Virus record (IMG/VR): IMGVR_UViG_3300042261_002385
Span: 248,001 to 312,000 of that record
DNA length: 64,000 nucleotides
Strand: one strand, 5' to 3'
Below the pieces are notes generated by a model, which searched no databases, was not told the origin of the DNA, and saw only the letters and a list, made by a program, of their open reading frames with translations. This document shows, piece by piece, positions 2,111-62,913 of this stretch. The first letter of the stretch is position 1. The number at the start of each line of letters is the position of its first letter. The translations under genes and the position numbers were made by a program.

Positions 2111-2199
2111 TGCAAATTTTATTTTTACAAATATATATAAAAAAAATTAATGTTAATAAGATTTAAAAAATTATATATAATTAAAAATTACACAATAAA

Positions 2200-2616
2200 A
2201 TGAATTTCAAAATTAATCTTCAAACAATCATAATGTTTATATTGTTAGGCTTTTCAATTTTATTCTTTTCTATGTGGTTTCTAAAAGGAACTGGATATAA
2301 AAAGGAATACAAAAAATTAGAACAAGAATTTCAAAAAATTCAGAAAATCAGAGACTCTCTACAAAAATTAAATATCAAATTGAAAGATGACTTTGATAAA
2401 AGAGAAATAGAAATAAAAAAGAGAGACAGTCTAATTAGGCTAGTCGAAAAAGAATTAATTAGAACTAAGCAAGAACTCAAAGAGGCGAAAAAGGATGTAG
2501 CAAAATGGCAATCCGACTATCAAAATACTAAGAAAAAGATTGAACAACTAAAAAAAGATCCTATAAAAAGAGAAGACGAAGAGTTAATGAAGTCTTTATC
2601 CGAAAAATTAAAATAA
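2200..2616 (+). CDS. Membrane-anchored coiled-coil protein (i-spanin-like)
   Basis: A single N-terminal hydrophobic helix is followed by a Lys/Glu heptad coiled coil. Confidence 0.45.
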   Translation: MNFKINLQTIIMFILLGFSILFFSMWFLKGTGYKKEYKKLEQEFQKIQKIRDSLQKLNIKLKDDFDKREIEIKKRDSLIRLVEKELIRTKQELKEAKKDVAKWQSDYQNTKKKIEQLKKDPIKREDEELMKSLSEKLK

Positions 2617-2619
2617 TAT

Positions 2620-3117
2620 ATGAAATCAATTATCCTAACAACATTATTTATGTTACTCTCAATTGTCTGTATTGGACAGAATTATCCAAGAATTGAAAAA
2701 GACTCACTTGGTAACAAATTTGTAATCATGACATATGATCAGGCACAAAAAATAGATAATGCATTTGAACTTGTAGCTTTATTAGAAAAAGCAGGAGCCG
2801 AGTGTGATAGTCTAAGTCTTTCATACGTAAAAGTTATCAGTAAACTTGAAAAACAAGTCTCTCAGTTAGAAACCGATTTAAAACTTTACAAAGGACAAGT
2901 CATTGATAAAGACAATCAAATAGAGAATTTAACACAAAGACTTAAAAACACCGAAGATGATGCCAAACTTTGTAACGACCAAATATCAATTAGAGATAAA
3001 CAAATAGTATTGCTAAATGATGAAATTAAAAGCCTGAAAACGAAAAGAAATATAGCTTACGGAGTTGGTATAGGTGGAACAATATTAGGAATTTTAGTTG
3101 CTATATTAGTTCATTAA
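2620..3117 (+). CDS. Signal peptide + coiled coil + C-terminal TM protein (spanin-like partner)
   Basis: MKSIILTTLFMLLSIVCIG|Q signal, coiled coil, and C-terminal TM IAYGVGIGGTILGILVAILV. Confidence 0.4.
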   Translation: MKSIILTTLFMLLSIVCIGQNYPRIEKDSLGNKFVIMTYDQAQKIDNAFELVALLEKAGAECDSLSLSYVKVISKLEKQVSQLETDLKLYKGQVIDKDNQIENLTQRLKNTEDDAKLCNDQISIRDKQIVLLNDEIKSLKTKRNIAYGVGIGGTILGILVAILVH

Positions 3118-3174
3118 TGAAAAAAGTCATTTTTTTAATATAATATATACTTTACAAAAAAATCATAATTGAAA

Positions 3175-3816
3175 ATGAAACACATTAGAACATTTGAAAG
3201 TTATCGTATTAGAAAGAATAGAGAAGAAATTATCAAAGAATCTGTTCTTCAAGTAAACGATATCTATAAAGTTAAGACAATGATTGATATTCCACAGTCA
3301 TTAATCAATGCTTATGTGAAAAAAGTGAAAGATACTACAGGTAAAAATCTACGTCAATTTTTTGGTGATGTTGACATCGCTGAAGAAATTGTCAAATTCA
3401 TAAATATGAACAACTTAGACGTTGAGAAACTACCAGGAAACGCACTTATGGGTGGAGCACAAGGTCAAGGACAAAGTCAAGGACAAGCACAGGTTCAAAC
3501 TGACGCTGAAGCTCAGACACAATCACAAGGTCAAGAAGAAGGACAAGCACAAGGACAAGGTCAGGGACAAGCTCAGGGTCAGGGACAAGCACAAGGACAA
3601 GCTCAGGGTCAAGGACAAGCTCAGGGTCAAGGACAAGCTCAGGGTCAAGGACAAGCTCAGGGTCAAGGTCAAGCTCAGGGTCAAGGTCAAGCACAAGGAC
3701 AAGCTCAAGGACAAGCTAAAGAAGAAGAGTTTGAAGAACCACAAGGTCAAGCACAAGGTCAAGCACAAGCCCAGGGTGAAGAAGAAAAACTTCCAGAAGA
3801 AGAGGAAGAAGCTTAA
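3175..3816 (+). CDS. Putative internal head protein with a Gly/Gln low-complexity tail
   Basis: ATG at 3175 gives [10 protein letters not shown], then a ~90 aa globular part, GQAQGQ repeats and an acidic end. Confidence 0.6.
3540..3714 (+). repeat. 18-bp coding tandem repeat (GQAQGQ)n
   Basis: Tandem units of the type cagggtcaaggacaagct. Confidence 0.9.
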
Positions 3817-3837
3817 AAATTACTACAGATATACTTC

Positions 3838-3865
3838 AAAACCCATCAGAAATGATGGGTTTTTT
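3838..3865 (+). terminator. Intrinsic terminator
   Basis: ACCCATCA-GAAA-TGATGGGT followed by a T-run. Confidence 0.85.
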
Positions 3866-3881
3866 ATTTAATATATAATTT

Positions 3882-4496
3882 ATGAGATTTATTAAAACAT
3901 TTGAGGCATACAACGAAGATACTCTTATAATAGTAGATGTGCAAAAATCATTTAGGAAGTTTTTTTCAGAGATGTATCTTAATGAATTAAAAAAATACTC
4001 TAAAAACTTCAATAACGTTTATCAAATATGGGACAATCACATTGATGGAAAAAACGTAGATAAAGAATACCTTTATGATATAAATCCAACAATTCCTATT
4101 CACGATGACCTGTTTTATTTTCCCAACCAAAAAGATATAATTGAAAAACGATACAATTATAAAGTCGATGCGGATTTCTACAAAAAGATTTTAGATTCTG
4201 ATATTTACGAAGAGATTAGTAAAAAAGAAGAAGAGAAAACTCTTAAAAAGGGTGATGTCTTTCCAACAAAAGAAGGAACAATTATAACATTTATCAACAA
4301 TAATCATGTTTGGTTTCATTGCCCAAAGAAGTTATATGAACTACTCATAGAATTGAAAGGAAGAGATGTCGTAATAGTAGGTGGTGCAGATTCAGAATGT
4401 TTAGAAGATATAGTTACTACAGCCGAAAGTTTAGATGTTAAGATAAAAAGAAATTATAAATTTATTTACACAGCTTCAAGTTGTCCTATAAAATAG
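3882..4496 (+). CDS. Isochorismatase/cysteine-hydrolase-like protein
   Basis: LIIVDVQKSF near the N-terminus and VVIVGGADSECL near the C-terminus. Begins MRFIKTFEAY. Confidence 0.55.
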   Translation: MRFIKTFEAYNEDTLIIVDVQKSFRKFFSEMYLNELKKYSKNFNNVYQIWDNHIDGKNVDKEYLYDINPTIPIHDDLFYFPNQKDIIEKRYNYKVDADFYKKILDSDIYEEISKKEEEKTLKKGDVFPTKEGTIITFINNNHVWFHCPKKLYELLIELKGRDVVIVGGADSECLEDIVTTAESLDVKIKRNYKFIYTASSCPIK

Positions 4497-4497
4497 A

Positions 4498-4872
4498 TTA
4501 AAATATAGCGGCATTCACTTCATACCCAGCTATAGTAAAATCAACGGTCATAAACTCTTCATGTTTCTCAGGGTGGTCAAAAAAATTAACCTCAACTGTA
4601 TACTCTATACCTTGAATTTCAGGTATGAATCGATTTATCTGTGATATGATATCAGATTGAACTGATTCAGCCGATAGACGAGTTTCATGAAGTAATTCAT
4701 ATAAATCAGCACCAAGACTTGGCTCTCCAAAAACTTCACCTTTGTTGGTAAAAATTATCATCTCGTATTTCTGAATGATTACTCTAATCACGTCATCCTC
4801 TATGAGATCTAAGTCTCTAAATCTTGGATGACCTGGATAACCTATATAAAAATCTATGAAACTATTTGCCAT
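4498..4872 (-). CDS. gp25: Baseplate wedge protein, gp25-like
   Basis: TNKGEVFGEPSLGADLYELLHE motif, 124 aa. Confidence 0.75.
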   Translation of the reverse strand: MANSFIDFYIGYPGHPRFRDLDLIEDDVIRVIIQKYEMIIFTNKGEVFGEPSLGADLYELLHETRLSAESVQSDIISQINRFIPEIQGIEYTVEVNFFDHPEKHEEFMTVDFTIAGYEVNAAIF

Positions 4873-4883
4873 AGACTTATATA

Positions 4884-5849
4884 TTATATTAAATTATCTC
4901 TATATTTACCAATGACAGTCATAGCTAAGATGAGTGGGTCTGAAACTGATTCTAATTTTGAAGAATAGTCGGAAAGTATATAGTTGCACAAAAATAACTT
5001 TTCAATATCCTTACCATTTTCAATAGACCAATCTACAAAAGGCTTACCTAATAATTTAAATAAAACATCTATTTTCTCAGGTCCAAATATATTGTTTGTG
5101 AAGTGCCAAACTCTTTCATAGTCATAGCTATCATCATATAACATCTCATATAGTTCAGATTTGACTTTATTAGAAACAGAGGTATATTGACTTGATAAAT
5201 GTCCAGTAGATAAGAAATTTTGTAATTCTACCATGATACTTCTAAAATCTGGAAATTTTTTAGTAATTATCGATACTAAATCTTCCTTCGTAACACTAGC
5301 GTTTTCTGAAGTAAGAATTACATTTTTAATTCTTTTGAACATCTCTTGTTTTAGATATCTCTCTTCACTAGTGTCCAAACAATCAAAATTTATTTGAGGA
5401 ATTCGTGATTTTATACCATCTGATATTTTGTTGATATGATTGGTAGTAATTATAAATCTTACATTTTTGTTATACTTTTCAATAAAGGCTTTAAAGGCAT
5501 CTTGGAATTGAGCGGAAACTCTTTCAAACTCATCTAAGAAAATATACTTTACATCAGATTCAGTCTCCATCATAGGTGTATATTTACAAAAATCTTCAAT
5601 TTGGGTTCTTAATATATCAATAGAGGTGAAGAGGGATGAATTTAACTCAAGAAACGGCTTATCTTTTGTATACTTACCTATCAATATTCTAGCTAAACTT
5701 GTTTTTCCTGTTCCATAGTGGCCATAAAATATATAATTACCAGTAACTCCATTTTCAAAATGTTTTCTTATTCTAGGTAAGAGAACTATGTCATCTATAG
5801 ACTTTGGCCTCCATTTTTCCCATAAAAGTAATTGATTGATTGAACTCAT
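4884..5849 (-). CDS. gp44: Sliding-clamp loader AAA+ subunit (gp44/RFC-like)
   Basis: LWEKWRPKSIDDIVL, GHYGTGKTS, FLDEFE and SR motifs. The true start is likely the ATG at 5849. Confidence 0.92.
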   Translation of the reverse strand: MSSINQLLLWEKWRPKSIDDIVLLPRIRKHFENGVTGNYIFYGHYGTGKTSLARILIGKYTKDKPFLELNSSLFTSIDILRTQIEDFCKYTPMMETESDVKYIFLDEFERVSAQFQDAFKAFIEKYNKNVRFIITTNHINKISDGIKSRIPQINFDCLDTSEERYLKQEMFKRIKNVILTSENASVTKEDLVSIITKKFPDFRSIMVELQNFLSTGHLSSQYTSVSNKVKSELYEMLYDDSYDYERVWHFTNNIFGPEKIDVLFKLLGKPFVDWSIENGKDIEKLFLCNYILSDYSSKLESVSDPLILAMTVIGKYRDNLI

Positions 5850-5882: not shown

Positions 5883-5918
5883 AAATAAATGTAAGAGATG
5901 ACTTTTTATATATAATTT

Positions 5919-7112
5919 ATGATAGGAGAAAGATTTAATTTTGAAGATGTCTTCTTTAGAGATTTGACAGTTTGTGTTTTAGACACATTCGAGGGTCAAG
6001 TCAGATGGACAAATAGATTTTCATCAGGAGATGTTCCTGTAAACGTTCCATTCTACTACTCATTAACTGGTGATGAAAGGTTTTTACTTGATTCATTTGC
6101 TGATGATGTAGTTTCTGAGAATAGATTTGTCGAGCTAAACACTGATGAAATTCCAAGAGGTCACTTAACAATGACAGGATTCAACATCAAATCAGATGAA
6201 TTTGCTAATCCAAATGTTTGGCTGAGAATGGTCGTTGAAAACGAAATTGAAATCAGAAAAGTTTTAGCTAAAGTCAGAGCAATTCCAATAACTGTAAATT
6301 ACGAATTAACAATACTACTTTCAAGTGAAATTGATACATTTAAGTGCGCACAAGCAATAATGGATACAATGTGGATTTACAAGTTCATGTATTTTGAACA
6401 CAACTTCATGAATATCGACGCTGTTATCTTGATGCCAGATACTAATCAAATTGAAATGAGCAGAGAAAAAAATCTAACATCTGATAATAATATTAAATTA
6501 AAGGCATCATTTGAAGTTAGCACTTACTATCCAGCATTTAGAAAAGATAGAATAAGTATGACTGGTTATCCAAGACAATACGGAACAGGTATGTCTGATT
6601 TGAACGGATTTCCAGTTGACGGCGGTTTCAGTGACTTATTTCCACAACCAGGTATTCCGAGAGACAGGCCAGGTGCTGAGCCATGGAATTTTCCAAGTCC
6701 CTCATCTTTAGGAGCAGCAGGCAGTGTCGGCGGAACAGAAACAACAGATCAAGGAGGAGTAAGGACTTCTCCAGAGACTTCAGATGGAACAGATCCAAAC
6801 TATCCGGAAAATACAGGACCTGTATTTCCTGGGGCTCCGGTTCCACCAGGATATCCAATTGGAGCTACAACAAGTAGTTTCTTTGGCAGAAGCACAACTC
6901 TAGGTTCAGATCCATCTCAGAGAATAATTAATGGATCCTTTGCTAATGATCCAGACTATTATCTAATAGCCCCTAAAAGGACTAGATGGTTTAATAATAT
7001 TTTACAAGCTAGACAAAAGGCAGCCACTCCACCGAGTAATCCAAATGCTGGCAATCCTGCTCCTGGTAATAATGGCGGGTCTAACCCACCTACAAATCCC
7101 AATCCAATCTAA
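5919..7112 (+). CDS. gp15: Tail terminator/sheath stabiliser, gp15-like, with a Pro/Gly-rich C-terminal extension
   Basis: VPFYY, IPRGHL and PITVNYELTI follow the T4 gp15 pattern. The last ~190 aa are low-complexity. Confidence 0.65.
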   Translation: MIGERFNFEDVFFRDLTVCVLDTFEGQVRWTNRFSSGDVPVNVPFYYSLTGDERFLLDSFADDVVSENRFVELNTDEIPRGHLTMTGFNIKSDEFANPNVWLRMVVENEIEIRKVLAKVRAIPITVNYELTILLSSEIDTFKCAQAIMDTMWIYKFMYFEHNFMNIDAVILMPDTNQIEMSREKNLTSDNNIKLKASFEVSTYYPAFRKDRISMTGYPRQYGTGMSDLNGFPVDGGFSDLFPQPGIPRDRPGAEPWNFPSPSSLGAAGSVGGTETTDQGGVRTSPETSDGTDPNYPENTGPVFPGAPVPPGYPIGATTSSFFGRSTTLGSDPSQRIINGSFANDPDYYLIAPKRTRWFNNILQARQKAATPPSNPNAGNPAPGNNGGSNPPTNPNPI

Positions 7113-7183
7113 AAATAAAATGGTAAAAATTGACTTTTTTGTCTTAATATATAGTTTAATAAAGAAAAAAAAATATCATAAAT

Positions 7184-8467: not shown

Positions 8468-8485
8468 ATACAATTTTTATAACAG

Positions 8486-8512
8486 AAACCCTCTTAATTA
8501 AGAGGGTTTTTT
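8486..8512 (+). terminator. Intrinsic terminator
   Basis: Perfect 24-bp palindrome AAACCCTCTTAATTAAGAGGGTTT followed by Ts. Confidence 0.85.
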
Positions 8513-8518
8513 AATTTA

Positions 8519-8547
8519 TAAACTTTTTTAGTAAATTAATATATAAC
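8519..8547 (+). promoter_or_regulatory. Class II promoter TAAACT-N17-TATAAC overlapping a late-type ATATATA, upstream of the sigma gene
   Basis: Read directly from the sequence. Confidence 0.55.
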
Positions 8548-8598
8548 ATGAAAGTTAATAGCTTCAGAGTTTTACTCTCAAAAAAATAAGCTATATGA

Positions 8599-8964
8599 AT
8601 GTATTTAAATAACAAAGACCTCTACGTAGAGATAATCGTATCAAAAGCGCAAGGAAAACTAACAAGAAACGCAGAAAAAATGCTAGAGCTACTAGCTAAG
8701 AAAACAATCAAAAAAATGAGATACTGGTCAAACGACGATAAACTAGACTGCTATCAATCAGGTCTACTAGATATGTTCCAAAATTGGTATAATTTCAATG
8801 AAGAAAAATCAGTAAACGCCTTCGCTTACTTTACAGAGGTATTTAAAAGAGGAATAGCTAAGGGATTCAATGAATTATATAAGAAAAAGGGAGACAATGA
8901 TAATTTAATTAAACTATTATCAATAGAAGGAAGCAACGACGGCCAAGGACTCCATTCAATCTAA
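8599..8964 (+). CDS. gp55: Late-transcription sigma factor, gp55-like
   Basis: YLNNKDL, DCYQSG and NFNEEKSVNAFAYFT parallel T4 gp55 YVNNKEL...NFDETK..NPHAYIT. Confidence 0.85.
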   Translation: MYLNNKDLYVEIIVSKAQGKLTRNAEKMLELLAKKTIKKMRYWSNDDKLDCYQSGLLDMFQNWYNFNEEKSVNAFAYFTEVFKRGIAKGFNELYKKKGDNDNLIKLLSIEGSNDGQGLHSI

Positions 8965-10120: not shown

Positions 10121-10160
10121 TATATATTTTTGAAACAAAGTTGAGTTTGTTCCATATATT
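10121..10160. promoter_or_regulatory. Overlapping divergent class II promoters
   Basis: Minus strand: CAAACT-N17-TATATA (10149-10121). Plus strand: GAAACA-N17-TATATT (10132-10160). Confidence 0.55.
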
Positions 10161-10176
10161 TGTAATAACAAAAATT

Positions 10177-11296: not shown

Positions 11297-11310
11297 TTTT
11301 ATATATAAAA
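11297..11310. promoter_or_regulatory. Palindromic bidirectional late-type promoter TTTTATATATAAAA
   Basis: Perfect 14-bp palindrome between the divergent starts at 11278 (-) and 11325 (+). Confidence 0.55.
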
Positions 11311-15068: not shown

Positions 15069-15079
15069 AGTGTATATAT

Positions 15080-15806: not shown

Positions 15807-15820
15807 ATTAGTTCTTTTTT

Positions 15821-17934: not shown

Positions 17935-17950
17935 AGAGTATATATTAAAT

Positions 17951-18520: not shown

Positions 18521-18547
18521 AACATATATATAAATTATCTTAAACAA

Positions 18548-19321: not shown

Positions 19322-19387
19322 AATATTTATTTTTTCTTTTATATATTTAGTTTCAAAAGTGATTTTTTTCTATTCTGAAAAGTTTTA

Positions 19388-21235: not shown

Positions 21236-21242
21236 TATATAT
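21236..21242 (-). promoter_or_regulatory. Late-type ATATATA promoter of the major capsid gene
   Basis: One of ~27 intergenic ATATATA sites upstream of gene starts. Confidence 0.55.
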
Positions 21243-23387: not shown

Positions 23388-23435
23388 TCAAAAATAATTA
23401 TTTTTTACCTTTTACAGTTGGATTATATATTACAT

Positions 23436-28371: not shown

Positions 28372-28423
28372 TTTTTAGTTCAATTTGATTTTATATATTA
28401 AATTTTAGATATTCCTCCAGAAT

Positions 28424-30535: not shown

Positions 30536-30552
30536 AATAAGTAAAGTATATA

Positions 30553-32865
30553 TTAAAAACTCCACTCATTATTTGTTTCATATTGATTAAGAATACCAGA
30601 CTTTTCTATCTGTGAAATAACCATTTCAGCCGTTATTGATTTTGTGCATTCAAACTGTCTTTGAGTTCCTTTATGTGTAGGACACCAATTCCAATCTCCT
30701 GGATCCAATCTAAAGTCATTAAAGCAACCTGAACATTTTCCTTCTGAAGCATTTATTCTAATTACGCCATTTTGTGGCTCAGTATAGTTATAACTAAATC
30801 CTGAAATTAAAACAGTAGGTGTTTTTGTTGCCCAACTTAACCAACTTAATCCAGACCCTATACCAATAAATAAAGTAGACCTTTGCATATATTTAATGAC
30901 TTCTTCAATAGAAGATGTGTTGGCCTTTTTTGCTCCTTTAGGATGTTTGTTACCCATATAATCATCACCTTCTTTCGAAAGAATGATGACTTCATATCCC
31001 TGAGAAATAAAGTGATCAGTAATCTTTTGCCATCCATCTGGATTATTCCAATACTTAGTCTGTGCGGTTCCGTGTATACCAATTGTGATAATTTTCTCTC
31101 TTGTAATATTAGTATCTAAATTTAGTTTTGGTTTTATTTCAGTAAAATCTAATCCCAATATATCAGTAGCCGTTTTTTGCATCGGTTGAAGTCTAAAATT
31201 ATTCTTATGATGTGTAATTCTTACTTGTTCACCATCATAGAACCAACCTATTCTATAGACTCCTAAAACGTTTGGAACAGATTGTCCGGGTTTTATAAAA
31301 TTAATCTCTGGATAGCTATTTTCAAATAAATTATTCCAGAAAGTAGAGCAGAATACTTGACAATTCCACCTTTTTCTAAACTCATCAACGTAAGGTATCC
31401 AAGCTAGTGTGTCTCCAAGTGCCGATGATTCAAACGTTATCAAAACCCTTTGTCCAGTAAAATCCAACTCGTATTCAAATTTATCCTCGTCATTTTCCGC
31501 GACTATCTTCCAATGAACAAAATACTGCAAACTAGTTTTGGCCCACGAGTTGTTTTGTAGTTTTAAATCATAAACTATATTTTCGGTCGATTTATCGATA
31601 AACTTGACATCGTAGTCTTTTAGTGTGTTCCTCACTTCTAAAAAGGCGCCATCATGAAACAATACTGAAAAGTTTGGTTTTAATTTTTTGATTGATTTTT
31701 TGTTATCAATATTTTTATAGAAATTAATTAACTTATCTTTGAATGTATTTTCATTATTCTTTTTACAATCATTCATTTCAATTATTTGATTTATGTTGTC
31801 AGCAATATCAGACTCTTTGACACAATGAAAGAACAAAATATCATTTTTATCAAACGGAATGTGTGATTGACTATAGTGTCCCAATTTCCAATCATTCATA
31901 TCTAATAAAAAATCTCCGGTCAAATTTGGATGTTGATAGAAGAAATTTACATCTTTTTCATTTCTAACATTAAGTCCAACTGTAATTAAATTAGGTGGCA
32001 TTTGATTTTTCCACAACAAACAGTTAAGTAAAAGTTCGTCATGTAGAAATTCAGTTTTACGTATTGTTTGTATTTCATCAGAGAAACATACTTTCTTCCA
32101 CTCTTTAAACAATTCTAAATGTGAGGAATTGAAAATTACTAAAAAGGTTATGCCGTTAGGATATGGTTGTTTAAAATTATCAATATCAAACCCCATAAAA
32201 TTCGAAACTTGAGGACCGGGTATGTATATACCATTCGCGATTACGTAATCCCACCTTTGTTTCTGAATAATTGGACCCGGTGTGATTTGAGGTATATCGA
32301 ATAACTCATCTATATTAGGTCTAACTTGAATATCCGAATCTAAAAAGACAGCATTTTGAATTCCTCTTTCAATGACATCTATGAATACAGGTGCTTTCAT
32401 AAATTGCATATATTGTTGGTCTGAATCACCAGGAACATCGAATCTTATATTTGTCAAATTTTTATAATTTAACTTAGATTCATAATTGATGCTGTAATGT
32501 AAAATAGGTATATTTGAGTATTTTTGCAGACCATCTAATAACTTTGATGTTATTTCTTCATATTTATCGTTAGATATCAAAATAAAAGCCCTCTCGATAT
32601 TAGTAGACACAAAGTCATCCACAACTTTAATACCATTCTCATAAATTCTCAGCGTCATTTTGTGTGACATATCAACTTCATGAAAAGGAGATATCATCAT
32701 ACCAAATATCTTTTCTTCAAATGGTTCAAACTTAGCTTCTGTATCAATGATACATTGATAACTTACTCCAAAAAGTAAAATTTTAGTTGATACTTTTCTA
32801 TTTTCTAAATTTTTTATAGATAAAAAACCATCTTTTATGATATAGTTAAACAATCCTTTCTGCAT
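30553..32865 (-). CDS. Bifunctional glycosyltransferase: GT-A (GT8-like) + TibC/Aah-type protein O-glycosyltransferase
   Basis: FLDSD (DxD) domain. The C-terminal half has the TibC-like beta region, ALGDTLAWIPY, FIG.GSGLSWL.WA, PTVLISGF and an iron-finger CSGC..WCPTHKGTQRQFECT. Confidence 0.85.
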   Translation of the reverse strand: MQKGLFNYIIKDGFLSIKNLENRKVSTKILLFGVSYQCIIDTEAKFEPFEEKIFGMMISPFHEVDMSHKMTLRIYENGIKVVDDFVSTNIERAFILISNDKYEEITSKLLDGLQKYSNIPILHYSINYESKLNYKNLTNIRFDVPGDSDQQYMQFMKAPVFIDVIERGIQNAVFLDSDIQVRPNIDELFDIPQITPGPIIQKQRWDYVIANGIYIPGPQVSNFMGFDIDNFKQPYPNGITFLVIFNSSHLELFKEWKKVCFSDEIQTIRKTEFLHDELLLNCLLWKNQMPPNLITVGLNVRNEKDVNFFYQHPNLTGDFLLDMNDWKLGHYSQSHIPFDKNDILFFHCVKESDIADNINQIIEMNDCKKNNENTFKDKLINFYKNIDNKKSIKKLKPNFSVLFHDGAFLEVRNTLKDYDVKFIDKSTENIVYDLKLQNNSWAKTSLQYFVHWKIVAENDEDKFEYELDFTGQRVLITFESSALGDTLAWIPYVDEFRKRWNCQVFCSTFWNNLFENSYPEINFIKPGQSVPNVLGVYRIGWFYDGEQVRITHHKNNFRLQPMQKTATDILGLDFTEIKPKLNLDTNITREKIITIGIHGTAQTKYWNNPDGWQKITDHFISQGYEVIILSKEGDDYMGNKHPKGAKKANTSSIEEVIKYMQRSTLFIGIGSGLSWLSWATKTPTVLISGFSYNYTEPQNGVIRINASEGKCSGCFNDFRLDPGDWNWCPTHKGTQRQFECTKSITAEMVISQIEKSGILNQYETNNEWSF

Positions 32866-36766: not shown

Positions 36767-37276
36767 TTACTTTCTATTTACATATATATATTGACCTCTA
36801 TCCCCCGTAACACCACCTCTTACAAAAAAATAACCAGCCACTGTCCAATCAATATTTACTGTTACTAATGCATTTATCATTTCAGAACCACTATTGTTTA
36901 GACTACTCATCTGAGTCAAATATGATTGAGCAGTAGCTCCTACAAATGACTGTGTAGGCGAAGCAATGTGTATAAATCTTGTTACGGGTTGAAATCCTGA
37001 ATTGCTTGTGCTTGAAGCATAATAAGCAACTACTACAGCGTTTGTAACACTTGTAGTTCCCGCATTCCAGTAACAAAATTTAGTACCAACACTATTCGTA
37101 TTTGCATCAGTTACTAAAAAAGATAACTCAACTGTATCTCCAACTCTAAACAAGTTTGGTGGAATATAAACTGAAATATATTCTATAGTAGTTCCACTAG
37201 CGGTGGTTCCTGGACTGGTTTGGACAGATACAGGATAAGAATAGGTAGCAAAGGTGTATGTGTTTACTCTTGACAT
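36767..37276 (-). CDS. Beta-rich virion accessory protein, paralogue 2 of 3
   Basis: FRVGDTVEL, YWNA, RFIHI and IDWTVAGY segments. Confidence 0.55.
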   Translation of the reverse strand: MSRVNTYTFATYSYPVSVQTSPGTTASGTTIEYISVYIPPNLFRVGDTVELSFLVTDANTNSVGTKFCYWNAGTTSVTNAVVVAYYASSTSNSGFQPVTRFIHIASPTQSFVGATAQSYLTQMSSLNNSGSEMINALVTVNIDWTVAGYFFVRGGVTGDRGQYIYVNRK

Positions 37277-42935: not shown

Positions 42936-43032
42936 TTATACAATTCTTTTTTCACTTTCCAAAAGAAATCAACATTATATATTAATTTAGTAAGACCTAA
43001 AAAGACTTATATTAATTTTTTCTGATCAAATA

Positions 43033-52200: not shown

Positions 52201-52308
52201 TAATGACTATATCTTTTTTACTTACTATATATAAAAAAAAGATTGTCTAAAATAATGGAGACTAGTCAAAACAAAATTATTTTGAACAAAAAAATTAGTC
52301 AATAAATT

Positions 52309-57185: not shown

Positions 57186-58199
57186 TTATCTTATTTCTAT
57201 ATCAACAGGTGAAAAATACCTGGTATTGCTCACCCAAACTTCATAATCTGTTCCACTAAAACCATAAACATTAGCCATTGGAGATGCGGTTCTCACATTC
57301 GAAAATGCAGTGCTGATGTTTCCATTTACTCTAAACACAGGAGAAGTAGCATCAGGTACTGTGCTTGGCCAAGCAAACAACAAATACTGACCCTGACCAT
57401 CAATATCTTTATAAATCTTCTCTTTAGTTACAGACAATTCATTCCCATACATCAAACCATTAGCACCAGCTCCATTCAACGATAAAATTGCACCATCTGT
57501 GCAAAGTGTAGCGACAGATGCAATTGAGCCAGGACTCTCAGTTAAATTTGGATTACTTATAGCCGTCAAATTGATTCGACCCCAGTAAATTCTATTCAAC
57601 CAGTAAAAAGACTGAGTAAAAGTGACAACATTACTACCATCATTCACACTGATAACAAAAGAACTACTCTGTGACACAGTCAACGGAGACACACTATGAG
57701 TAGAAGTCGTCGATTGAACGCCGGAGTAGGGAGGAAATATTTTAGGAACACCTGCTACTACTAGGGTCGCCGGAATCAACGAATCAGACCCAAGAGTAAC
57801 ACTATAATTAAGAGAAACCGACAACGGTGCACCAAACTCTCGATTCGACAAAGAGTTAATAAACGGAGATGGTGCTACATATGGGTAAAAAATCCGATCC
57901 AAGACATTTTGAATACTACCAGAGAAAGTAGAACCACTAGTAACCCCACCCACAGGTGTTTGATTAGTAGACGGAGTAGCGGAAGAATACTCTGTAGCAG
58001 CAGTGCCAGAAACAGCCAAACTAGCAGATAATCCATCGATTCGTTCCCATACTGTATAGGCCACATTTCTGACGTCAATAGCCTTAATACTACCAGAGGT
58101 ATTATCCAACAAACCTAACAAAAGTTCATCTAGAGTAGAGAATTCATAACTCAAAGAAGATGAAGCACCAGAAATACTATATGAACTTACCGTAGCCAT
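57186..58199 (-). CDS. Virion structural protein at the head of the fibre operon
   Basis: VGGV.SGSTF..LDRIFYPYVAP and YWG..YLLFAWP segments, with its own late-type promoter. Confidence 0.6.
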   Translation of the reverse strand: MATVSSYSISGASSSLSYEFSTLDELLLGLLDNTSGSIKAIDVRNVAYTVWERIDGLSASLAVSGTAATEYSSATPSTNQTPVGGVTSGSTFSGSIQNVLDRIFYPYVAPSPFINSLSNREFGAPLSVSLNYSVTLGSDSLIPATLVVAGVPKIFPPYSGVQSTTSTHSVSPLTVSQSSSFVISVNDGSNVVTFTQSFYWLNRIYWGRINLTAISNPNLTESPGSIASVATLCTDGAILSLNGAGANGLMYGNELSVTKEKIYKDIDGQGQYLLFAWPSTVPDATSPVFRVNGNISTAFSNVRTASPMANVYGFSGTDYEVWVSNTRYFSPVDIEIR

Positions 58200-58273
58200 T
58201 TAAAATATAATTTAGTTATATATTAAATCCGAACGGCCAAAACTTAAGAAATTATATCATGATGTTTCATGAA

Positions 58274-58985: not shown

Positions 58986-59294
58986 TTAATTAATTGAATT
59001 TTTATTCAAAGTATGAAGGTCTAAAAAATCGTCCTCTTCTATTTCTCTTTCTACGCTTAAGCCTTCTATTTCATCATCATCTAAACGGTCCCCTACAGTT
59101 TCATACCATTCATCTTTGCTCAATTCTTCAATTGTTGAACTTTTACAGAATTTACAGTTATCAACCTCGTTGTTTAGAACTTTCCATAGAGCATCACAAT
59201 CATCACAGTGATAATATAGTGTCAAATCTGCTTTAGATGCTAATGGCAAAGTCTGGCTAAAATCAAAAGTCTCAAATTTCTTAATCCATCTCAT
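58986..59294 (-). CDS. Small zinc-ribbon protein with the MRWIKKFETF tag
   Basis: CxxC...CxxC. Confidence 0.65.
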   Translation of the reverse strand: MRWIKKFETFDFSQTLPLASKADLTLYYHCDDCDALWKVLNNEVDNCKFCKSSTIEELSKDEWYETVGDRLDDDEIEGLSVEREIEEDDFLDLHTLNKNSIN

Positions 59295-59366
59295 ACACTC
59301 TATATATAAAAATTAGTAATTCATTTTATTTTCAAAATTAGAGTTGACCTGATTAATATATACTTT

Positions 59367-60269
59367 ATGAATCTAAAACAACTAAAAGATTTCTACAATA
59401 AGAAGCCTGTTGAATTTGTTATTAAAGAACACTACGACTTAATTGAAGACAATGAGTATATTCCAAGATTTTCACTTAAGAATGTAAAAGATATTTCTAA
59501 TATTCCTATTAACAAACCGATTAAGTATTCCGATGATATAATGGCAAAAGCTATAAAATTTGGAATGATATTCTTAATCAACTATAAAGGTGAAGATGAT
59601 AAACATTTTGCTGGTCATGAGCGCGTAATTTACCCAATGGTTTTAGGTAGGAGTTCAAAAGGTAAAACTCTCTTAAGAGCTTGGCACTTAAACGGATGGT
59701 CTGTTTCACAAAAAAGACACATCAATAAGATTTGGAGACTATTTAGAACAGACAGAATTCTATCTATGACTTTCACTGGTTCGTTTTATAGACTTCCTCC
59801 TTCAGGTTATAATATGAATGATAAAGGTATGAGAGGTGGTTTTATAGCTAAGGCAGACTTTAATGAGATTAGAAGAAATCAACAGAACTTAGTTAATCAA
59901 AATAAGATTCAAAATAGAGAAGAAGTTACTATGGGTGACCAAGATAGGAAATTTGTTTCTATAAAAGTCAGTGAAACATCTACTATCTTAGATTTAACAA
60001 AAGCTATGGATAATGCCTATATCAACAATATAAAAGATATGGCTAACGTAAGATTATCTTTTCTTCGCAGCATCTATGGAAACAAATACATTGCTATATT
60101 AGGAGCCTTAGGGCAACCAGGCAACACCGTTAAAGTTTTCACAGATAAAGGAGTTCAAGTTGGTGTTTTTAAAGTATTAGATTCAATAACTGGTCAAGTG
60201 TTGAGAAGTATAAAGAACGTTAAAGGAAACACAATATACGACCTATACTTATTTGACTCTAAGGTATAA
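59367..60269 (+). CDS. WYL-like domain protein
   Basis: INY..ERVIYPMVLG..LLRAWH..WRLFRTDRILSM follows the WYL strand pattern. Confidence 0.65.
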   Translation: MNLKQLKDFYNKKPVEFVIKEHYDLIEDNEYIPRFSLKNVKDISNIPINKPIKYSDDIMAKAIKFGMIFLINYKGEDDKHFAGHERVIYPMVLGRSSKGKTLLRAWHLNGWSVSQKRHINKIWRLFRTDRILSMTFTGSFYRLPPSGYNMNDKGMRGGFIAKADFNEIRRNQQNLVNQNKIQNREEVTMGDQDRKFVSIKVSETSTILDLTKAMDNAYINNIKDMANVRLSFLRSIYGNKYIAILGALGQPGNTVKVFTDKGVQVGVFKVLDSITGQVLRSIKNVKGNTIYDLYLFDSKV

Positions 60270-60296: not shown

Positions 60297-60313
60297 ATTT
60301 TTTTTATATCATA

Positions 60314-60913
60314 TTATTTAATATCACTAGACTCAATAAGTGTGTATGTGAACGAGTTTCCGTGAATATCTCTAGCTTTTCTACAGATTTTCATTAACGC
60401 TTCAAAGTCTGCTGATTTCTTGAAAACTTGACACCCTTCAGACCAGTTTTCAACATACGTTGAATCAGCACCAGCTTTATGTATATTAATACCAAAAACA
60501 CCTTCAGCAATTTTATTCTCATCATAATTCAAATCTTTGTTAGCATCCCTATAAACCTTAACATTTTTTAATTGTCTTAGAGCCTCATATTTACCTTGAT
60601 GCAAACCAATTCCATGTGAACCCCTATATTGACCTTCAACAAGTCTTGCAACACCAGCCGCATTGTGATATTCTAGAACTCCCTTTTTACCAGGATCAGT
60701 TGTTGCTGGCCAGCAGTGAAATTTCCACTCACCATTTTCTTTGTAAGATAAAGTAATACAATCATCAAAAGCATTTGTTACTTTTTGACCTGTTGATGAA
60801 TTTCTAATACCAATAATATTAACATCAAAACCCTTATTATTTATATCTTCAAAGTAGACATATCCTTTTGATTTGACCGCTACCTCAACTTGTTCTCTTG
60901 TATAACAACTCAT
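60314..60913 (-). CDS. L,D-transpeptidase-like (His/Cys) protein, candidate endolysin
   Basis: ATTDPG, VYRD and GINIH-x-WSEGCQV motifs. No signal peptide. Confidence 0.55.
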   Translation of the reverse strand: MSCYTREQVEVAVKSKGYVYFEDINNKGFDVNIIGIRNSSTGQKVTNAFDDCITLSYKENGEWKFHCWPATTDPGKKGVLEYHNAAGVARLVEGQYRGSHGIGLHQGKYEALRQLKNVKVYRDANKDLNYDENKIAEGVFGINIHKAGADSTYVENWSEGCQVFKKSADFEALMKICRKARDIHGNSFTYTLIESSDIK

Positions 60914-60923
60914 ATTTTATAAT

Positions 60924-61637
60924 TTATTTTTTGAAATCTACGAAACTTTTTATTCCTCTCATCTCATCTTCTAAATCTTTGTTAGCTAAATGACCTTCAG
61001 TTTCTTCATGAGATGGCTCTTCATAATGTGTGTAATTGAGGTCTTCACTTGGAACATCGTGACCTGCAACAAAGTTAAAAACATGTTCAATGTTCTCAGC
61101 TGCTACAGAGATGTGGTCTGAAGCCCAATCGTGCTCAGACAACATGTTATCTAAAGTGTGCTCATCCATTTCTAGCATTTCATCTACTAATCTTTTGATA
61201 GTCTCTAAATTTGAGAAAAACATATAATTTTGAGTTTCTTGATGTTCTCTAAGTCTTTTAACTGTTCTAGATCTCTTGTAGTTTCTAGACTCACTTAGTA
61301 ATGCTTCATCGTTATTATAAGCATCCTGTTCCTCGTGATCCTTACACATAAGTCTCAATTCTTCATCTGAACACATCTCTAATTCATCTTCTGAGTAACC
61401 ACATCTGCAAAGGTAGTTACACATTGATTCTCTGTCCATAGAATTCATATTTTCGTTATGTGAATTCATATGAGAGTGATCATCGTGACTATCAGCCATA
61501 GTTCTACACATCATTTCTAACTCATCATCAGACTTGTCATGTAATTCATGCATGCTACAACCACATACATTACATAAGTATTTACACATCTCTTCTCTAT
61601 CTTGAGAATAAGATTCAAATTTTTTAATTAACCTCAT
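60924..61637 (-). CDS. Cys/Met/His-rich protein with an internal duplication and the MRLIKKFESY tag
   Basis: Two DRExMCxYLC..C..EL...SDxEL.MC repeats and a C-terminal HDWASDHI domain. Confidence 0.6.
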   Translation of the reverse strand: MRLIKKFESYSQDREEMCKYLCNVCGCSMHELHDKSDDELEMMCRTMADSHDDHSHMNSHNENMNSMDRESMCNYLCRCGYSEDELEMCSDEELRLMCKDHEEQDAYNNDEALLSESRNYKRSRTVKRLREHQETQNYMFFSNLETIKRLVDEMLEMDEHTLDNMLSEHDWASDHISVAAENIEHVFNFVAGHDVPSEDLNYTHYEEPSHEETEGHLANKDLEDEMRGIKSFVDFKK

Positions 61638-61669
61638 ATTAAGTGTTATTTTTTAGTATATATTAAATT

Positions 61670-62815
61670 TTAAAATAAAATATTGACCACCTCAGGATAG
61701 TATTTTGTCATCTCAATATTTCTATCTTCGTATTTAATAACCGACAAAACATATCTCATAGCATTTAGTCTACCTATTTTTTTATCATTTGAATTTATTA
61801 TGACCCAAGGTGACAAAGCCGAAGAAGTTTGTTGAAACATTTGTCTTTTAAAGTTACCTATGATTTCCCATTTGTCTAAAACCTTAGCGTCGTTCGGAGA
61901 AAACTTCCAATATTTTAATGGGGATTTTTGTCTTAACTCAAATCTCTTTATTTGTTTATCCTGAGTAATAGAAAACCAAAACTTAATTAAAATAACACCA
62001 CTTCTTATTAGCTTTTCTTCCCAATCTACAACATTGTCCATAAAGTCTTCATACTGTTCTTCACTACAATATCCCATAGCTGGTTCTACTACTGCTCTAT
62101 TATACCAACTTCTATCAAAGAAAACAATTTCGCCAGATTTCGGTAAATGTTTTTCATATCTTTTGAACCAATTATTTTTTTCTTCTTCAGTTGGAACCCC
62201 AAGAGCGACAACTCTAAAACCATTTGGATTGAGATACTCAACAAACCTTTTTATTGTCGAACCTTTACCAGCAGCATCTCTACCCTCAAAAACTATCGCT
62301 ACCTTTTGACCGGTTTTTTTAACCCATTCTTGTAGTTTTAGTAATTCAACTTGTAGCTGATATTTCTCTGACTCATATTGTCTTCTACCAATTATTGATC
62401 CTTCACCTTCAAATTCATCAAAGTGGTCTTCTTTCTTACCCTGTTTGTGTATCTGGTCAATTCTCACACCAATAGAAACGTAGTAATCATCAAAAGCTTC
62501 TCTAACTTTTCTTTTAGTATTTCTTTTCTTTAGTTCTAAAAGTTGATTAATTTTACGAAGAAAAGCTTCAATATTCAATTCAGAGACAACTTCTTCAGTA
62601 AATTCATTAGTAAGTTCTCTAATAACAACTTTGACATCAATTGAGTCGAAATTCCTATACTCAACTTTGTTTGTTTCAAAATTATATATGATATTGGCTA
62701 AGATGTATGTTCTATATTCACCGAGTCTAAATATCAGATTTTGTTTCAAAGTCTCTAATGACTTCTCATCCATATCTTCAATCCAAATCTCCTCTAAAAT
62801 CTTTTTATAATTCAT
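61670..62815 (-). CDS. ppk2: Polyphosphate kinase 2 with a ~120-aa N-terminal extension
   Basis: FEGRDAAGKG, FDRSWYNRA..E..MG, KFWFSI, KYWKFSP.D and PWVII.SNDKK motifs. Confidence 0.95.
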   Translation of the reverse strand: MNYKKILEEIWIEDMDEKSLETLKQNLIFRLGEYRTYILANIIYNFETNKVEYRNFDSIDVKVVIRELTNEFTEEVVSELNIEAFLRKINQLLELKKRNTKRKVREAFDDYYVSIGVRIDQIHKQGKKEDHFDEFEGEGSIIGRRQYESEKYQLQVELLKLQEWVKKTGQKVAIVFEGRDAAGKGSTIKRFVEYLNPNGFRVVALGVPTEEEKNNWFKRYEKHLPKSGEIVFFDRSWYNRAVVEPAMGYCSEEQYEDFMDNVVDWEEKLIRSGVILIKFWFSITQDKQIKRFELRQKSPLKYWKFSPNDAKVLDKWEIIGNFKRQMFQQTSSALSPWVIINSNDKKIGRLNAMRYVLSVIKYEDRNIEMTKYYPEVVNILF

Positions 62816-62913
62816 AAATAGATAAAAATGTTTATTTATATATTATTTTCAACAGTTGAAAAATGATAATAAAGACATTGACTTATTAATTTTCTGCTAA
62901 TTAAAAATTGACC

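What the first reader, a model, noticed from the sequence alone, without database searches (positions are those of the whole stretch)
2132..62843. Late-type ATATATA promoter motif and apparently leaderless mRNAs
ATATATA, usually TTWATATATA, precedes about 27 gene starts, including capsid (21236), protease (23424), portal (28392) and fibre genes (42976, 52226, 58217). It is a candidate counterpart of T4 TATAAATA for the gp55-like sigma. The gap to the ATG is exactly 4 nt at 3882, 5919, 15068, 17934, 18520 and 59367, 5 nt at 4872 and 6 nt at 59294, with no SD sequence. This implies transcription starts at or beside the AUG. The motif is low-complexity in AT-rich DNA, so enrichment needs a formal test.
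Basis: partly seen in the sequence, partly recalled or inferred. Interest (0 to 1): 0.6.

Follow-up and report, generated by a model that had tools for sequence, protein, structure and literature searches.

The report
Phage promoter placed directly against start codons
A 436-kb freshwater megaphage carries one short AT-rich promoter box, TTAATATATA, in front of about a third of its genes. In nearly half of those cases the box sits exactly 4-5 bases before the ATG, so the mRNAs should start at the start codon itself, which is rare in the phage's likely Bacteroidota hosts.

Summary

- **Enrichment.** Across the whole 436-kb genome, TTAATATATA is the most enriched upstream 10-mer. Intergenic DNA holds 73 copies against 1.5 expected; 400 kb of coding DNA holds 9.
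- **Spacing.** The distance from motif to ATG has two peaks, 4-8 nt (74 genes, mode 4) and 15-32 nt (81 genes). Only 3 genes fall at 9-14 nt (P about 1e-12). Eighty related phage loci show the same pattern.
- **One element.** Both spacing classes share the same 10-nt box. An A sits 5 nt downstream in 80-83% of leadered sites, which is exactly where the A of ATG lies in the short class.
- **Host-type promoters.** The phage also uses the Bacteroidota box TAnnTTTG, whose start site is known to lie 4-5 nt after the G. That box also sits 4-5 nt before ATG in 12 of 53 genes.

Best reading: this is a single-box promoter, probably read by the phage's gp55-like protein, that produces leaderless or short-leader mRNAs.

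Caveats:
- There is no direct mapping of transcript starts.
- "No SD" is true of the whole genome, so it is not evidence here.
- "Late" is not exclusive, because a ribonucleotide reductase gene also carries the motif.
- The assignment to the gp55-like sigma is inferred.

The parts
3871..3877 (+). ATATATA box (TTTAATATATA), 4 nt before the ATG of gene 3882-4496. An intrinsic terminator at 3838-3863 lies directly upstream.
4878..4884 (-). Box 5 nt before the ATG of gene 4498-4872 (gp25-like baseplate wedge).
5908..5914 (+). Box 4 nt before the ATG of gene 5919-7112. The overlapping minus-strand copy (5907-5913) faces gene 4884-5849.
15073..15079 (-). Box 4 nt before the ATG at 15068 (M28 peptidase-like, 14322-15068). 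The T-run of terminator 15085-15105 runs into the box.
17939..17945 (-). Box 4 nt before the ATG of gene 16402-17934 (peptidase). It fills the 16-nt gap after the upstream gene. Orthologues keep a gap of 4-5 nt or switch to 24-25 nt.
18525..18531 (-). Box 4 nt before the ATG of gene 17951-18520 (NFACT-R_1 domain). Terminator 18548-18571 lies 16 nt upstream.
59301..59307 (-). Box 6 nt before the ATG of gene 58986-59294.
59356..59362 (+). Box 4 nt before the ATG of gene 59367-60269.
21236..21242 (-). Box 27 nt before the major capsid gene 19436-21208. Predicted +1 is the A at 21231, followed by an A-rich 22-nt leader. The box is conserved in about 74 of 80 relatives.
23424..23430 (-). Box 36 nt before the head maturation protease gene 21288-23387. 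It is present in all orthologous loci shown, at gaps of 26-38 nt.
28392..28398 (-). Box 20 nt before the portal gene 26707-28371.
19340..19346 (-). Box 18 nt before gene 18593-19321; conserved in relatives.
42976..42982 (-). Box 40 nt before the collagen-like tail fibre gene 37848-42935.
52226..52232 (-). Box 25 nt before the 3055-aa gene 43033-52200.
58217..58223 (-). Box 17 nt before gene 57186-58199.
2132..2138 (-). Box 21 nt before gene 1595-2110. It overlaps a host-type TATATTTG box (gap 17), so the promoter class is ambiguous.
2173..2179 (+). Box 20 nt before gene 2200-2616.
3143..3149 (+). Box 25 nt before gene 3175-3816.
7147..7153 (+). Box 30 nt before gene 7184-8467.
8539..8545 (+). 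Box 53 nt before the gp55-like gene, downstream of terminator 8484-8511. This could allow the sigma to drive its own gene.
8599..8964 (+). gp55-like late sigma candidate, 121 aa. It is single-copy in the genome and 80-95% identical across the clade.
10121..10127 (-). Box 18 nt before gene 9023-10102.
11300..11307 (.). Back-to-back boxes in a divergent intergenic region. The plus copy is 17 nt before the ATG at 11325; the minus copy is 21 nt before gene 10751-11278.
30547..30553 (-). Box 11 nt before the ATG at 30535 (17 nt before the next in-frame ATG) of gene 29771-30535.
36783..36789 (-). Box 19 nt before gene 36104-36763.
61657..61663 (-). Box 19 nt before gene 60924-61637.
62837..62843 (-). 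Box 21 nt before gene 61670-62815.
10155..10162 (+). Host-type Bacteroidota -7 box (TATATTTG), 14 nt before gene 10177-10437. This is the second promoter class, included for contrast.

Best explanation
TTAATATATA is the phage's own single-element promoter. It is a -10-like box occupying about -14 to -5, with no -35 partner. Transcription starts at the conserved A, 5 nt after the box, which is usually preceded by a T. The box is most likely read by host core RNA polymerase carrying the phage's 121-aa gp55-like sigma.

In about 46% of promoter-proximal genes (74 of 161, roughly 15% of all genes), that A is the A of the ATG or lies 1-4 nt before it. Those mRNAs would be leaderless or nearly so, and would be translated by direct ribosome binding to a 5'-terminal AUG. 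In the other sites the start codon lies 15-32 nt from the box, which gives a 12-28 nt A-rich, SD-free leader of the Bacteroidota type. Leaders of about 5-10 nt would suit neither mode of initiation, and they are avoided.

**Shown:** the motif's enrichment, orientation, spacing and conservation; the conserved A; the presence of a gp55 homologue.

**Inferred:** the transcript start position, which sigma reads the box, the timing of expression, and that the leaderless mRNAs are translated.
For: 1. **Enrichment and orientation.** Intergenic DNA holds 73 TTAATATATA against 1.5 expected; coding DNA holds 9; 75 of 87 copies lie sense-upstream of a gene.
2. **Promoter-obligate positions.** The motif is present at 88 of 144 genes heading a divergent pair, against 88 of 345 co-directional genes. 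Together with TAHHTTTG it accounts for 75% of divergent heads.
3. **Bimodal spacing.** 74 genes lie at 4-8 nt, 3 at 9-14 nt and 81 at 15-32 nt; the binomial P for the valley is 1.5e-12. Eighty related loci repeat this: 122-126 sites at gap 4, almost none at 9-15, and a broad hump at 16-30.
4. **One element in both classes.** Both share the TT-A extension (70-81%), which ATATATA copies not next to a gene lack.
5. **Conserved A.** An A sits 5 nt after the box in 80% (own genome) and 83% (relatives) of leadered sites, against 40% at copies not next to a gene. The base before it is T in 89-90% of gap-4 sites, while the other spacer bases vary (39 different tetramers).
6. **Independent calibration.** The host-type box TAHHTTTG has a known position of -12 to -5, with the start site 4-5 nt after the G (PMC6847099; PMC9723704). 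In this phage it also lies 4 nt (8 genes) or 5 nt (4 genes) before the ATG, for example at the NAD-dependent ligase gene, whose protein aligns with its family from residue 2.
7. **No room for another promoter.** Strong terminators abut the box at five short-gap genes, three of them in the window.
8. **Orthologue switching.** The gene-17934 orthologue keeps its N-terminus while alternating between a 4-5 nt and a 24-25 nt gap.
9. **The sigma.** It matches PHROG 234 at E = 4e-7 and Sigma70_r2 weakly, and has homologues annotated as late sigma in the jumbo phages XacN1 and Xoo-sp13. The box matches T4's TATAAATA at 6 of 8 positions and, like it, has no -35 element (PMC2988020).
10. **Gene content.** It precedes capsid, protease, portal, baseplate and fibre genes. 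Host-type boxes precede ligase, phosphoesterase, polymerase and IF3 genes.
Against: - No 5' ends were mapped. Metatranscriptome contigs cover the capsid gene but cannot show starts, and two of them run across the capsid promoter. That means either read-through or DNA in the library.
- Strict T4 geometry (box at -13 to -6) would place +1 on the U of AUG in the commonest class, so a 1-nt shift has to be assumed.
- The motif also precedes a ribonucleotide reductase gene and genes upstream of DnaB, so it is not purely 'late'.
- Two other phage sigmas exist, one sigmaA-like (286 aa) and one ECF-like (199 aa).
- No gp45-type clamp domain was detected, and gp33 was not tested.
- The structure model of the sigma was too poor to compare with gp55 (pLDDT 52).
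- Only 5 of 79 short-gap sites have a terminator directly upstream. Most such genes could therefore also be translated from read-through polycistronic RNA.
- The more distant relatives Lak-C1 and pT24 show ATAAATA rather than this box.
Confidence: 0.7

Rival explanations
1. The box is a promoter with the same geometry, but it is read by a different factor: the phage's sigmaA-like 286-aa sigma, its ECF-like sigma, or an undetected phage RNA polymerase. It would not then be a 'late' signal specific to the gp55-like protein.
For: The phage encodes two further sigma-70-family proteins. The motif also precedes ribonucleotide reductase and genes upstream of DnaB. No gp45-type clamp was found. PhiKZ-type polymerases are too divergent for the single Pfam test that was run.
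Against: Sigmas that have region 4 normally need a -35 or -33 element, and none is conserved here. The sigmaA-like protein fits the separate TAHHTTTG class better. ECF promoters are not AT-only. The gp55-like gene is single-copy, 80-95% conserved and found with the motif across the clade. The box resembles T4's TATAAATA.
Confidence: 0.17
2. The motif acts on RNA as an AU-rich translation enhancer or ribosome-binding element. It would sit where an SD normally sits, 4-8 nt before the AUG, and transcription would start further upstream.
For: The short-gap class lies at SD-like spacing. The genome has no SD sequences, so another signal could substitute. Half of the short-gap genes follow a co-directional gene. 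RNA contigs cross the capsid site.
Against: Half of the sites lie 15-32 nt from the ATG, too far for a ribosome-binding element, yet they carry the identical 10-nt box. Two thirds of genes lack the motif. It is enriched at divergent-pair heads that need a promoter. Terminators abut it. The unrelated host promoter box shows the same 4-5 nt peak. The general translation signal is a separate A-rich tract at -17 to -9.
Confidence: 0.05
3. The motif is an RNA processing site. A phage or host endonuclease would cut polycistronic RNA there, giving 5' ends next to the AUG.
For: Many sites lie in very short spacers between co-directional genes. RNA contigs span the capsid site.
Against: The motif is most frequent at heads of divergent pairs, where no upstream sense transcript exists. 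It follows terminators. It resembles known -10-type boxes in sequence and position, and a cognate-type sigma is encoded.
Confidence: 0.04
4. The pattern is a by-product of AT-rich intergenic composition and of how ORFs are called.
For: The genome is 31% GC and intergenic DNA is 26% GC. The motif is low-complexity, and it contains TAA, which can close upstream reading frames.
Against: Markov models of the intergenic DNA itself predict 1.5 copies against 73 observed. Control AT-rich 7-mers give no spacing peak. The peak appears without any gene model. The box is conserved at orthologous sites while its flanks diverge.
Confidence: 0.01

Closest known systems
T4 late promoters (TATAAATA) read by gp55, with gp33 and the gp45 clamp
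   Same: Both are a single 8-10 bp AT-only box at the -10 position with no -35 element, present in many copies on both strands in front of virion genes. A gp55 homologue is encoded. Six of 8 bases are identical when the 3' ends are aligned (PMC2988020).
   Different: The sequence is AATATATA, not TATAAATA. The box appears to end at -5 rather than -6. No gp45-type clamp was detected and gp33 was not tested. The sigma is 121 aa against 185 in T4 (from memory), with a different conserved C-terminal tail. T4 late mRNAs have SD-containing leaders, whereas about half of these promoters abut the start codon. The motif is also found at some nucleotide-metabolism genes.
Bacteroidota sigmaA -7 promoter (TAnnTTTG, -12 to -5, start site 4-5 nt after the G)
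   Same: Both have the same position relative to the inferred start, and the same 4-5 nt distance to the ATG in the leaderless subset. They share A at -11, T at -8 and T at -6. Both have AT-rich upstream DNA and no strong -33 element (PMC6847099; PMC9723704).
   Different: The box lacks the defining TTTG. It forms a separate class that heads different genes (virion genes rather than ligase, polymerase and IF3), and both classes coexist in the phage.
Leaderless-gene architecture of Actinobacteria, Deinococcus and Archaea (a -10 or TATA box at a fixed short distance from the start codon; GeneMarkS-2 'group C/D')
   Same: A promoter box lies at a fixed short distance before ATG starts, and leaderless and leadered genes coexist (PMC6028130, from its abstract and from memory).
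   Different: The host phylum uses few leaderless mRNAs: 3.7% in B. thetaiotaomicron and 5.5% in F. psychrophilum (PMC7366714; PMC9723704). Here the share is about 46% of promoter-proximal genes, and it is driven mostly by a phage-specific box.
PhiKZ late promoters (T-3 A T G+1) and poxvirus late promoters (TAAATG; the poxvirus case is from memory)
   Same: Both are viral late promoter elements that overlap or abut an ATG-like sequence. The gap-4 sites here read T-ATG in about 90% of cases (PMC4666361).
   Different: In phiKZ the start is the G, TATG is not a start codon, and a phage polymerase reads it. Here the leadered sites have no TATG, only T(-1)A(+1), and the specificity lies in the upstream box.

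Membership tests
T4-type late transcription (gp55-dependent promoter) | Single AT-rich box at the -10 position, with no conserved -35 element | tested here: met
   Information content is confined to the 10-nt box plus the T/A at -1/+1. Upstream positions are only weakly T- or A-biased.
T4-type late transcription (gp55-dependent promoter) | Consensus TATAAATA | tested here: not met
   The consensus is (TT)AATATATA: 6 of 8 identical when the 3' ends are aligned. T4-like ATAAATA is enriched instead in samples of Lak-C1 and pT24.
T4-type late transcription (gp55-dependent promoter) | Phage encodes a gp55-family sigma (region-2-like, no region 4) | tested here: met
   PHROG 234 at E = 4e-7 over profile positions 10-106 of 181; one copy in the genome; weak Sigma70_r2 match (E = 0.008); tblastn hits to annotated late sigmas. 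The structural check failed (pLDDT 52).
T4-type late transcription (gp55-dependent promoter) | gp45 sliding clamp and gp33 co-activator | tested here: inconclusive
   The Pfam gp45 domains gave no hit, but the control for one of them rang nowhere. The beta-clamp domain gave no hit. A clamp-loader-like gene is present. gp33 was not searched.
T4-type late transcription (gp55-dependent promoter) | Restricted to late (virion and lysis) genes | tested here: inconclusive
   It precedes capsid, protease, portal, baseplate, fibre and an endolysin-domain gene. It also precedes ribonucleotide reductase and genes upstream of DnaB. No timing data exist.
Leaderless mRNA genes | Promoter box at a fixed short distance from the start codon | tested here: met
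   Sharp peak at 4 nt (then 5 and 6) in the genome and in 80 relatives. The host-type box shows the same peak.
Leaderless mRNA genes | Transcript 5' end at, or within a few nt of, the AUG | not testable with these tools
   Only assembled metatranscriptome contigs were available, and these cannot show starts.
Leaderless mRNA genes | The ATG is the true and first start codon | tested here: met
   In relatives, 122 of 126 gap-4 ATGs are the first ATG of an ORF of 60 aa or more. Orthologue N-termini align from residue 1-3. The ligase aligns with its family from residue 2.
Bacteroidota sigmaA -7 promoter | TAnnTTTG with invariant T-8, T-7, T-6 and G-5 | tested here: not met
   The box has A at -7 and A at -5. 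True TAHHTTTG boxes form a separate class in the same genome.

The most novel reading that the evidence does not exclude
A widespread clade of freshwater megaphages may run a genome-wide leaderless translation programme in hosts that rarely use one. Phage-specific gp55-type promoters would be positioned so that +1 is the A of the AUG at about 15-19% of all genes. The phage's own IF3 homologue and bS21 ribosomal protein might help by shifting ribosome preference towards, or tolerance of, 5'-terminal AUGs.
Probability: 0.2. Interest if true: 0.8.

Novelty: new variant of a known kind. Interest (0 to 1): 0.62.

Why it matters
- **Annotation of huge phages.** Nothing is established about how the huge uncultured phages related to the Lak and 'Mahaphage' groups organise transcription. 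This gives a testable promoter consensus, a predicted start position and a candidate sigma for a clade found in freshwater metagenomes from at least 15 studies. It would improve the calling of gene starts and operons in such genomes.
- **Translation in Bacteroidota.** If the geometry means what it appears to, nearly half of the phage's transcription units yield leaderless mRNAs, in a host phylum where these are about 4-5% of mRNAs. That raises a direct question: how do SD-independent Bacteroidota ribosomes handle 5'-terminal AUGs, and do the phage's translation-factor genes influence it?
- **Evolution of gp55-type promoters.** It extends the known range of gp55-type promoter specificity from TATAAATA to AATATATA.

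Tried and rejected
- **RNA evidence.** Four metatranscriptome runs were laid on window 15400-21399. Only assembled contigs were available. They cover the capsid gene and relatives but show no starts, and two cross the capsid promoter. The result is uninformative for start sites.
- **Structure of the gp55-like protein.** The AlphaFold model from a shallow 13-sequence alignment reached only pLDDT 52, so no fold search was run.
- **Solved structures by sequence.** Neither the single sequence nor the profile gave a meaningful PDB hit.
- **The big representative search.** Not used, because the family scan had already named the protein.
- **Sigma-70 type promoters.** 99 found against 102 expected, so no enrichment.
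- **Terminator directly upstream as a general rule.** Only 5 of 79 short-gap sites have one, against 1.3% of random positions. This is supportive but rare.
- **Phage RNA polymerase and gp45 clamp.** The Pfam beta-prime domain, both gp45 domains and the beta-clamp domain were all negative. These tests are weak for divergent phage proteins.
- **Alternative genetic code.** Code 11 already gives 91% coverage by long ORFs, so there is no sign of recoding.
- **Motif in distant relatives.** The 735-kb phage LR756501 has ATATATA only at 17-25 nt in a 40-kb sample. Lak-C1 and Tenacibaculum phage pT24 show ATAAATA instead. The leaderless arrangement is therefore shown only for the closer clade.
- **Literature.** No paper combined 'leaderless' with megaphage, jumbo phage, Lak or crAss-like terms. 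The 'moraphage' paper says nothing about promoters.
- **Known RNAs.** There are no tRNA or Rfam hits in the window.

Full report
**Context.** The window is bases 248001-312000 of a 436,265-bp virus record. The genome is 31% GC and reads well under the standard bacterial code, with long ORFs covering 91%. Its nearest named relatives are huge uncultured phages of 635-735 kb, at 70-78% nucleotide identity over the capsid region. The same DNA occurs in freshwater, lake, lagoon and drinking-water metagenomes from 15 studies. PHROGs confirm that the window holds the virion module: major head protein, head maturation protease, portal, baseplate wedge and collagen-like fibres.

**Checking the observation.**
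- ATATATA occurs 48 times in the window, against 19.9 +/- 5.5 in shuffles.
- I listed every copy with its first downstream ATG that opens an ORF of 50 aa or more.
- I then made a crude gene map of the whole genome (490 genes) and counted k-mers in the 60 nt before each gene without prior assumptions. TTAATATATA is the top 10-mer, with 75 of its 87 genomic copies sense-upstream of a gene. AATATATA is the top 8-mer, with 127 of 169.
- Intergenic DNA (36.4 kb) holds 73 TTAATATATA, against 1.5 expected from a first-order Markov model of that same DNA and 5.2 from a third-order model. The 400 kb of coding DNA holds 9.
- The enrichment is therefore large and is not a composition effect.

**The spacing.**
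- The distance from the end of the box to the start codon has two peaks. For AATATATA the counts are 29 sites at 4 nt, 17 at 5, 6 at 6, 4 at 7 and 2 at 8. Almost nothing lies at 9-15 nt, and a second peak spans 16-25 nt.
- By gene, 74 lie at 4-8 nt, 3 at 9-14 nt and 81 at 15-32 nt. If spacing were uniform, 33 would fall in the valley (P = 1.5e-12).
- Without any gene model, an ATG follows the 296 ATATATA copies at offset 4 in 38 cases, offset 5 in 20 and offset 6 in 14, over a baseline of 2-5.

**Relatives.**
- Eighty IMG/VR loci with capsids 67-90% identical give the same picture from 1,032 distinct sites: 126 at 4 nt, 24 at 5, 10 at 6, a valley at 9-15 and a hump at 16-30.
- In 122 cases the gap-4 ATG is the first ATG of its ORF. 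Control AT-rich 7-mers show no such peak.
- The box is conserved upstream of the capsid gene in about 74 of 80 loci, and upstream of the protease gene in every locus shown, while the flanking sequence drifts.
- The orthologue of gene 17934 keeps its N-terminus but alternates between a 4-5 nt gap and a 24-25 nt gap. This suggests only those two spacings are tolerated.
- Among the 126 gap-4 sites the spacer takes 39 different tetramers, but its last base is T in 113.

**One element, and a likely start site.**
- Short-gap and long-gap sites share the same upstream extension (T, T, then A; 70-81% each). ATATATA copies not next to a gene lack it.
- In long-gap sites the fifth base after the box is A in 80% (own genome) and 83% (relatives), against 40% at copies not next to a gene. 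It is followed by an A-rich run.
- That fifth base is exactly where the A of the ATG lies in the 4-nt class.
- A pyrimidine at -1 and a purine at +1 is the usual start-site preference (general knowledge).

**An independent calibration from the host-type promoter.**
- Upstream regions without the box revealed a second motif, TATATTTG/TATCTTTG, often followed by TA. This is the Bacteroidota sigmaA -7 element TAnnTTTG.
- In Flavobacterium johnsoniae that element occupies -12 to -5, with 4 or 5 nt between it and the start site (PMC6847099). F. psychrophilum shows the same position (PMC9723704).
- In this phage it heads genes for an NAD-dependent ligase, phosphoesterases, a clamp-loader-like protein, and the operon holding an IF3 homologue and a family-B polymerase.
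- It too lies 4 nt (8 genes) or 5 nt (4 genes) before the ATG, with a second cluster at 12-20 nt.
- By the published geometry, those transcripts begin at the A of the AUG. Two unrelated boxes sharing this spacing argues that the spacing reflects the transcription start, not a property of one sequence.

**Why a promoter and not an RNA element.**
- Genes that head a divergent pair must have their own promoter in the intergenic region. ATATATA is present there in 88 of 144 such genes, against 88 of 345 co-directional genes. With TAHHTTTG it accounts for 108 of 144.
- Five short-gap genes have a strong terminator running into the box, which leaves no room for another promoter. Three are in the window, at 3838-3863, 15085-15105 and 18548-18571.
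- A ribosome-binding role cannot explain the identical box at 15-32 nt, nor its absence from two thirds of genes.
- The genome's general translation signal is a separate A-rich tract at -17 to -9. SD cores occur in only 10 of 490 genes.

**Which factor reads it.**
- The 121-aa protein at 8599-8964 matches PHROG 234, 'late sigma transcription factor' (E = 4e-7), and is the only such gene in the genome.
- It shows a weak region-2 signal and is 80-95% identical across hundreds of metagenomic relatives.
- It has homologues in Lak megaphages, Tenacibaculum and Chryseobacterium phages, and Xanthomonas jumbo phages where it is annotated as a late sigma.
- T4 late promoters are an 8-bp TATA box about one helical turn upstream of the start with no -35 element (PMC2988020). 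The box here has the same architecture and 6 of 8 identical bases.
- However, the phage also encodes a sigmaA-like sigma with regions 1.2-4 and an ECF-like sigma. No gp45-type clamp was found, and my structure model was too poor to use. The assignment is therefore the best inference, not a result.

**Is it 'late'?**
- In the window the box heads virion genes, and elsewhere it heads large unannotated proteins and an endolysin-domain protein. Host-type boxes head replication and repair genes. That fits an early/late split.
- A ribonucleotide reductase gene and two genes upstream of DnaB also carry the box, and the box lies 53 nt before the gp55-like gene itself.
- 'Phage-specific, mainly late' is as far as the data go.

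**Direct RNA evidence.** Only assembled contigs from four metatranscriptomes could be laid. They show capsid-gene RNA from this phage group but cannot define starts, and two contigs cross the capsid promoter.

**Comparison and novelty.**
- Leaderless mRNAs are 3.7% of mRNAs in B. thetaiotaomicron and 5.5% in F. psychrophilum. In F. johnsoniae, 87% of predicted transcripts have leaders longer than 10 nt (PMC7366714; PMC9723704; PMC6847099).
- Here about 46% of ATATATA-headed genes, and about 19% of all genes once the host-type short-gap cases are added, have the leaderless geometry.
- I found no paper linking leaderless transcripts with megaphages, jumbo phages, Lak or crAss-like phages.
- I rate this a new variant of known kinds: a gp55-type promoter with altered sequence, used at scale in a leaderless arrangement.

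**Limits.** The gene map is home-made. Annotation covers only a sample of genes. The samples from distant relatives are 40 kb each. Start sites are inferred throughout.

Noticed in passing
window 10155-10162 (+); genome-wide, e.g. G000:C1:85418-85430, 156160-156172, 316587-316599: A second promoter class, the Bacteroidota sigmaA -7 box TAHHTTTG, heads ligase, phosphoesterase, clamp-loader-like, IF3 and polymerase genes. It points to a Bacteroidota host. It also sits 4-5 nt before the ATG in 12 of 53 genes.
   Followed up: yes
G000:C1, e.g. upstream of genes at 200430-201014(-), 396444(+), 411491(+), 428443(+), 410951-411382(-): Several TAHHTTTG-driven leaders share a motif just before the ATG, such as AAATCACTAC or AAATCCACT. 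CACTA occurs within 14 nt of the start in 4 of 28 such genes, against 1 of 382 other genes. Its function is unknown.
   Followed up: partly
G000:C1:414577-415401 (-) and 82057-82656 (-): Besides the gp55-like protein, the phage encodes a sigmaA-like sigma (regions 1.2, 2, 3 and 4; about 286 aa) and an ECF-like sigma (199 aa). The ECF-like gene lies in the operon headed by the leaderless-type ligase promoter.
   Followed up: partly
G000:C1:316967-317506 (+) and 117752-117943 (-): The phage encodes an IF3 homologue (IF3_C, E = 5e-26) in an operon with host-type promoters, next to the polymerase gene. It also encodes a ribosomal protein bS21 homologue (E = 8e-8). IF3 is known to discriminate against leaderless starts (from memory), so a link to the leaderless genes is conceivable but untested.
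   Followed up: partly
G000:C1:203506-203952 (-) and 317539-318897 (+): Family-B DNA polymerase matches fall in two ORFs more than 110 kb apart, and one match has a TAA inside it. This may be a split or duplicated polymerase.
   Followed up: no
window 15158-15540 (-): A stretch of about 380 nt with no called gene begins with overlapping ATATATA and TACATTTG boxes (15510-15516) and holds only a 35-aa ORF (15299-15406). RNA contigs from three metatranscriptomes pile up at 15407-15476. It has no tRNA or Rfam match. It may be a small RNA or a small protein gene.
   Followed up: partly
window 8484-8599 (+): The gp55-like gene is preceded by a terminator (8484-8511) and then its own putative cognate box (8539-8545), with a predicted leader of about 49 nt. 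This could allow positive autoregulation.
   Followed up: no
window 37848-52200 (-): Two giant collagen-like fibre genes (1695 and 3055 aa) are far more GC-rich (42-46%) than the genome (31%). They carry many long antisense ORFs, consistent with repetitive Gly-X-Y coding.
   Followed up: no
L101 (Prevotella phage Lak-C1, 40 kb) and L100 (Tenacibaculum phage pT24, 40 kb): These more distant carriers of the gp55-like gene (37-42% identity) show an upstream excess of ATAAATA: 14 sense against 2 antisense in Lak-C1, and 8 against 1 in pT24. That is the T4-like late box rather than ATATATA. Box specificity seems to have shifted within the family.
   Followed up: partly
genome-wide (short-gap genes): Genes with the 4-8 nt gap begin their second codon with A in 81% of cases (AAA, AGA or AAG), against 50% for long-gap genes and 65% for the rest. 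This may be a downstream preference of leaderless starts.
   Followed up: partly
window 14322-15068, 16402-17934; G000:C1:154960-156159; window 17951-18520: There are three paralogous M28-type peptidase genes, each with a leaderless-type promoter. Next to two of them is a protein with an NFACT-R_1 RNA-binding domain.
   Followed up: no
G000 as a whole: IMG/VR labels the record a provirus (95% complete). However, near-identical DNA is found in free-water metagenomes from many studies, and the last 40 kb or so has lower ORF coverage (55-85%). The label and the genome ends deserve a check.
   Followed up: no
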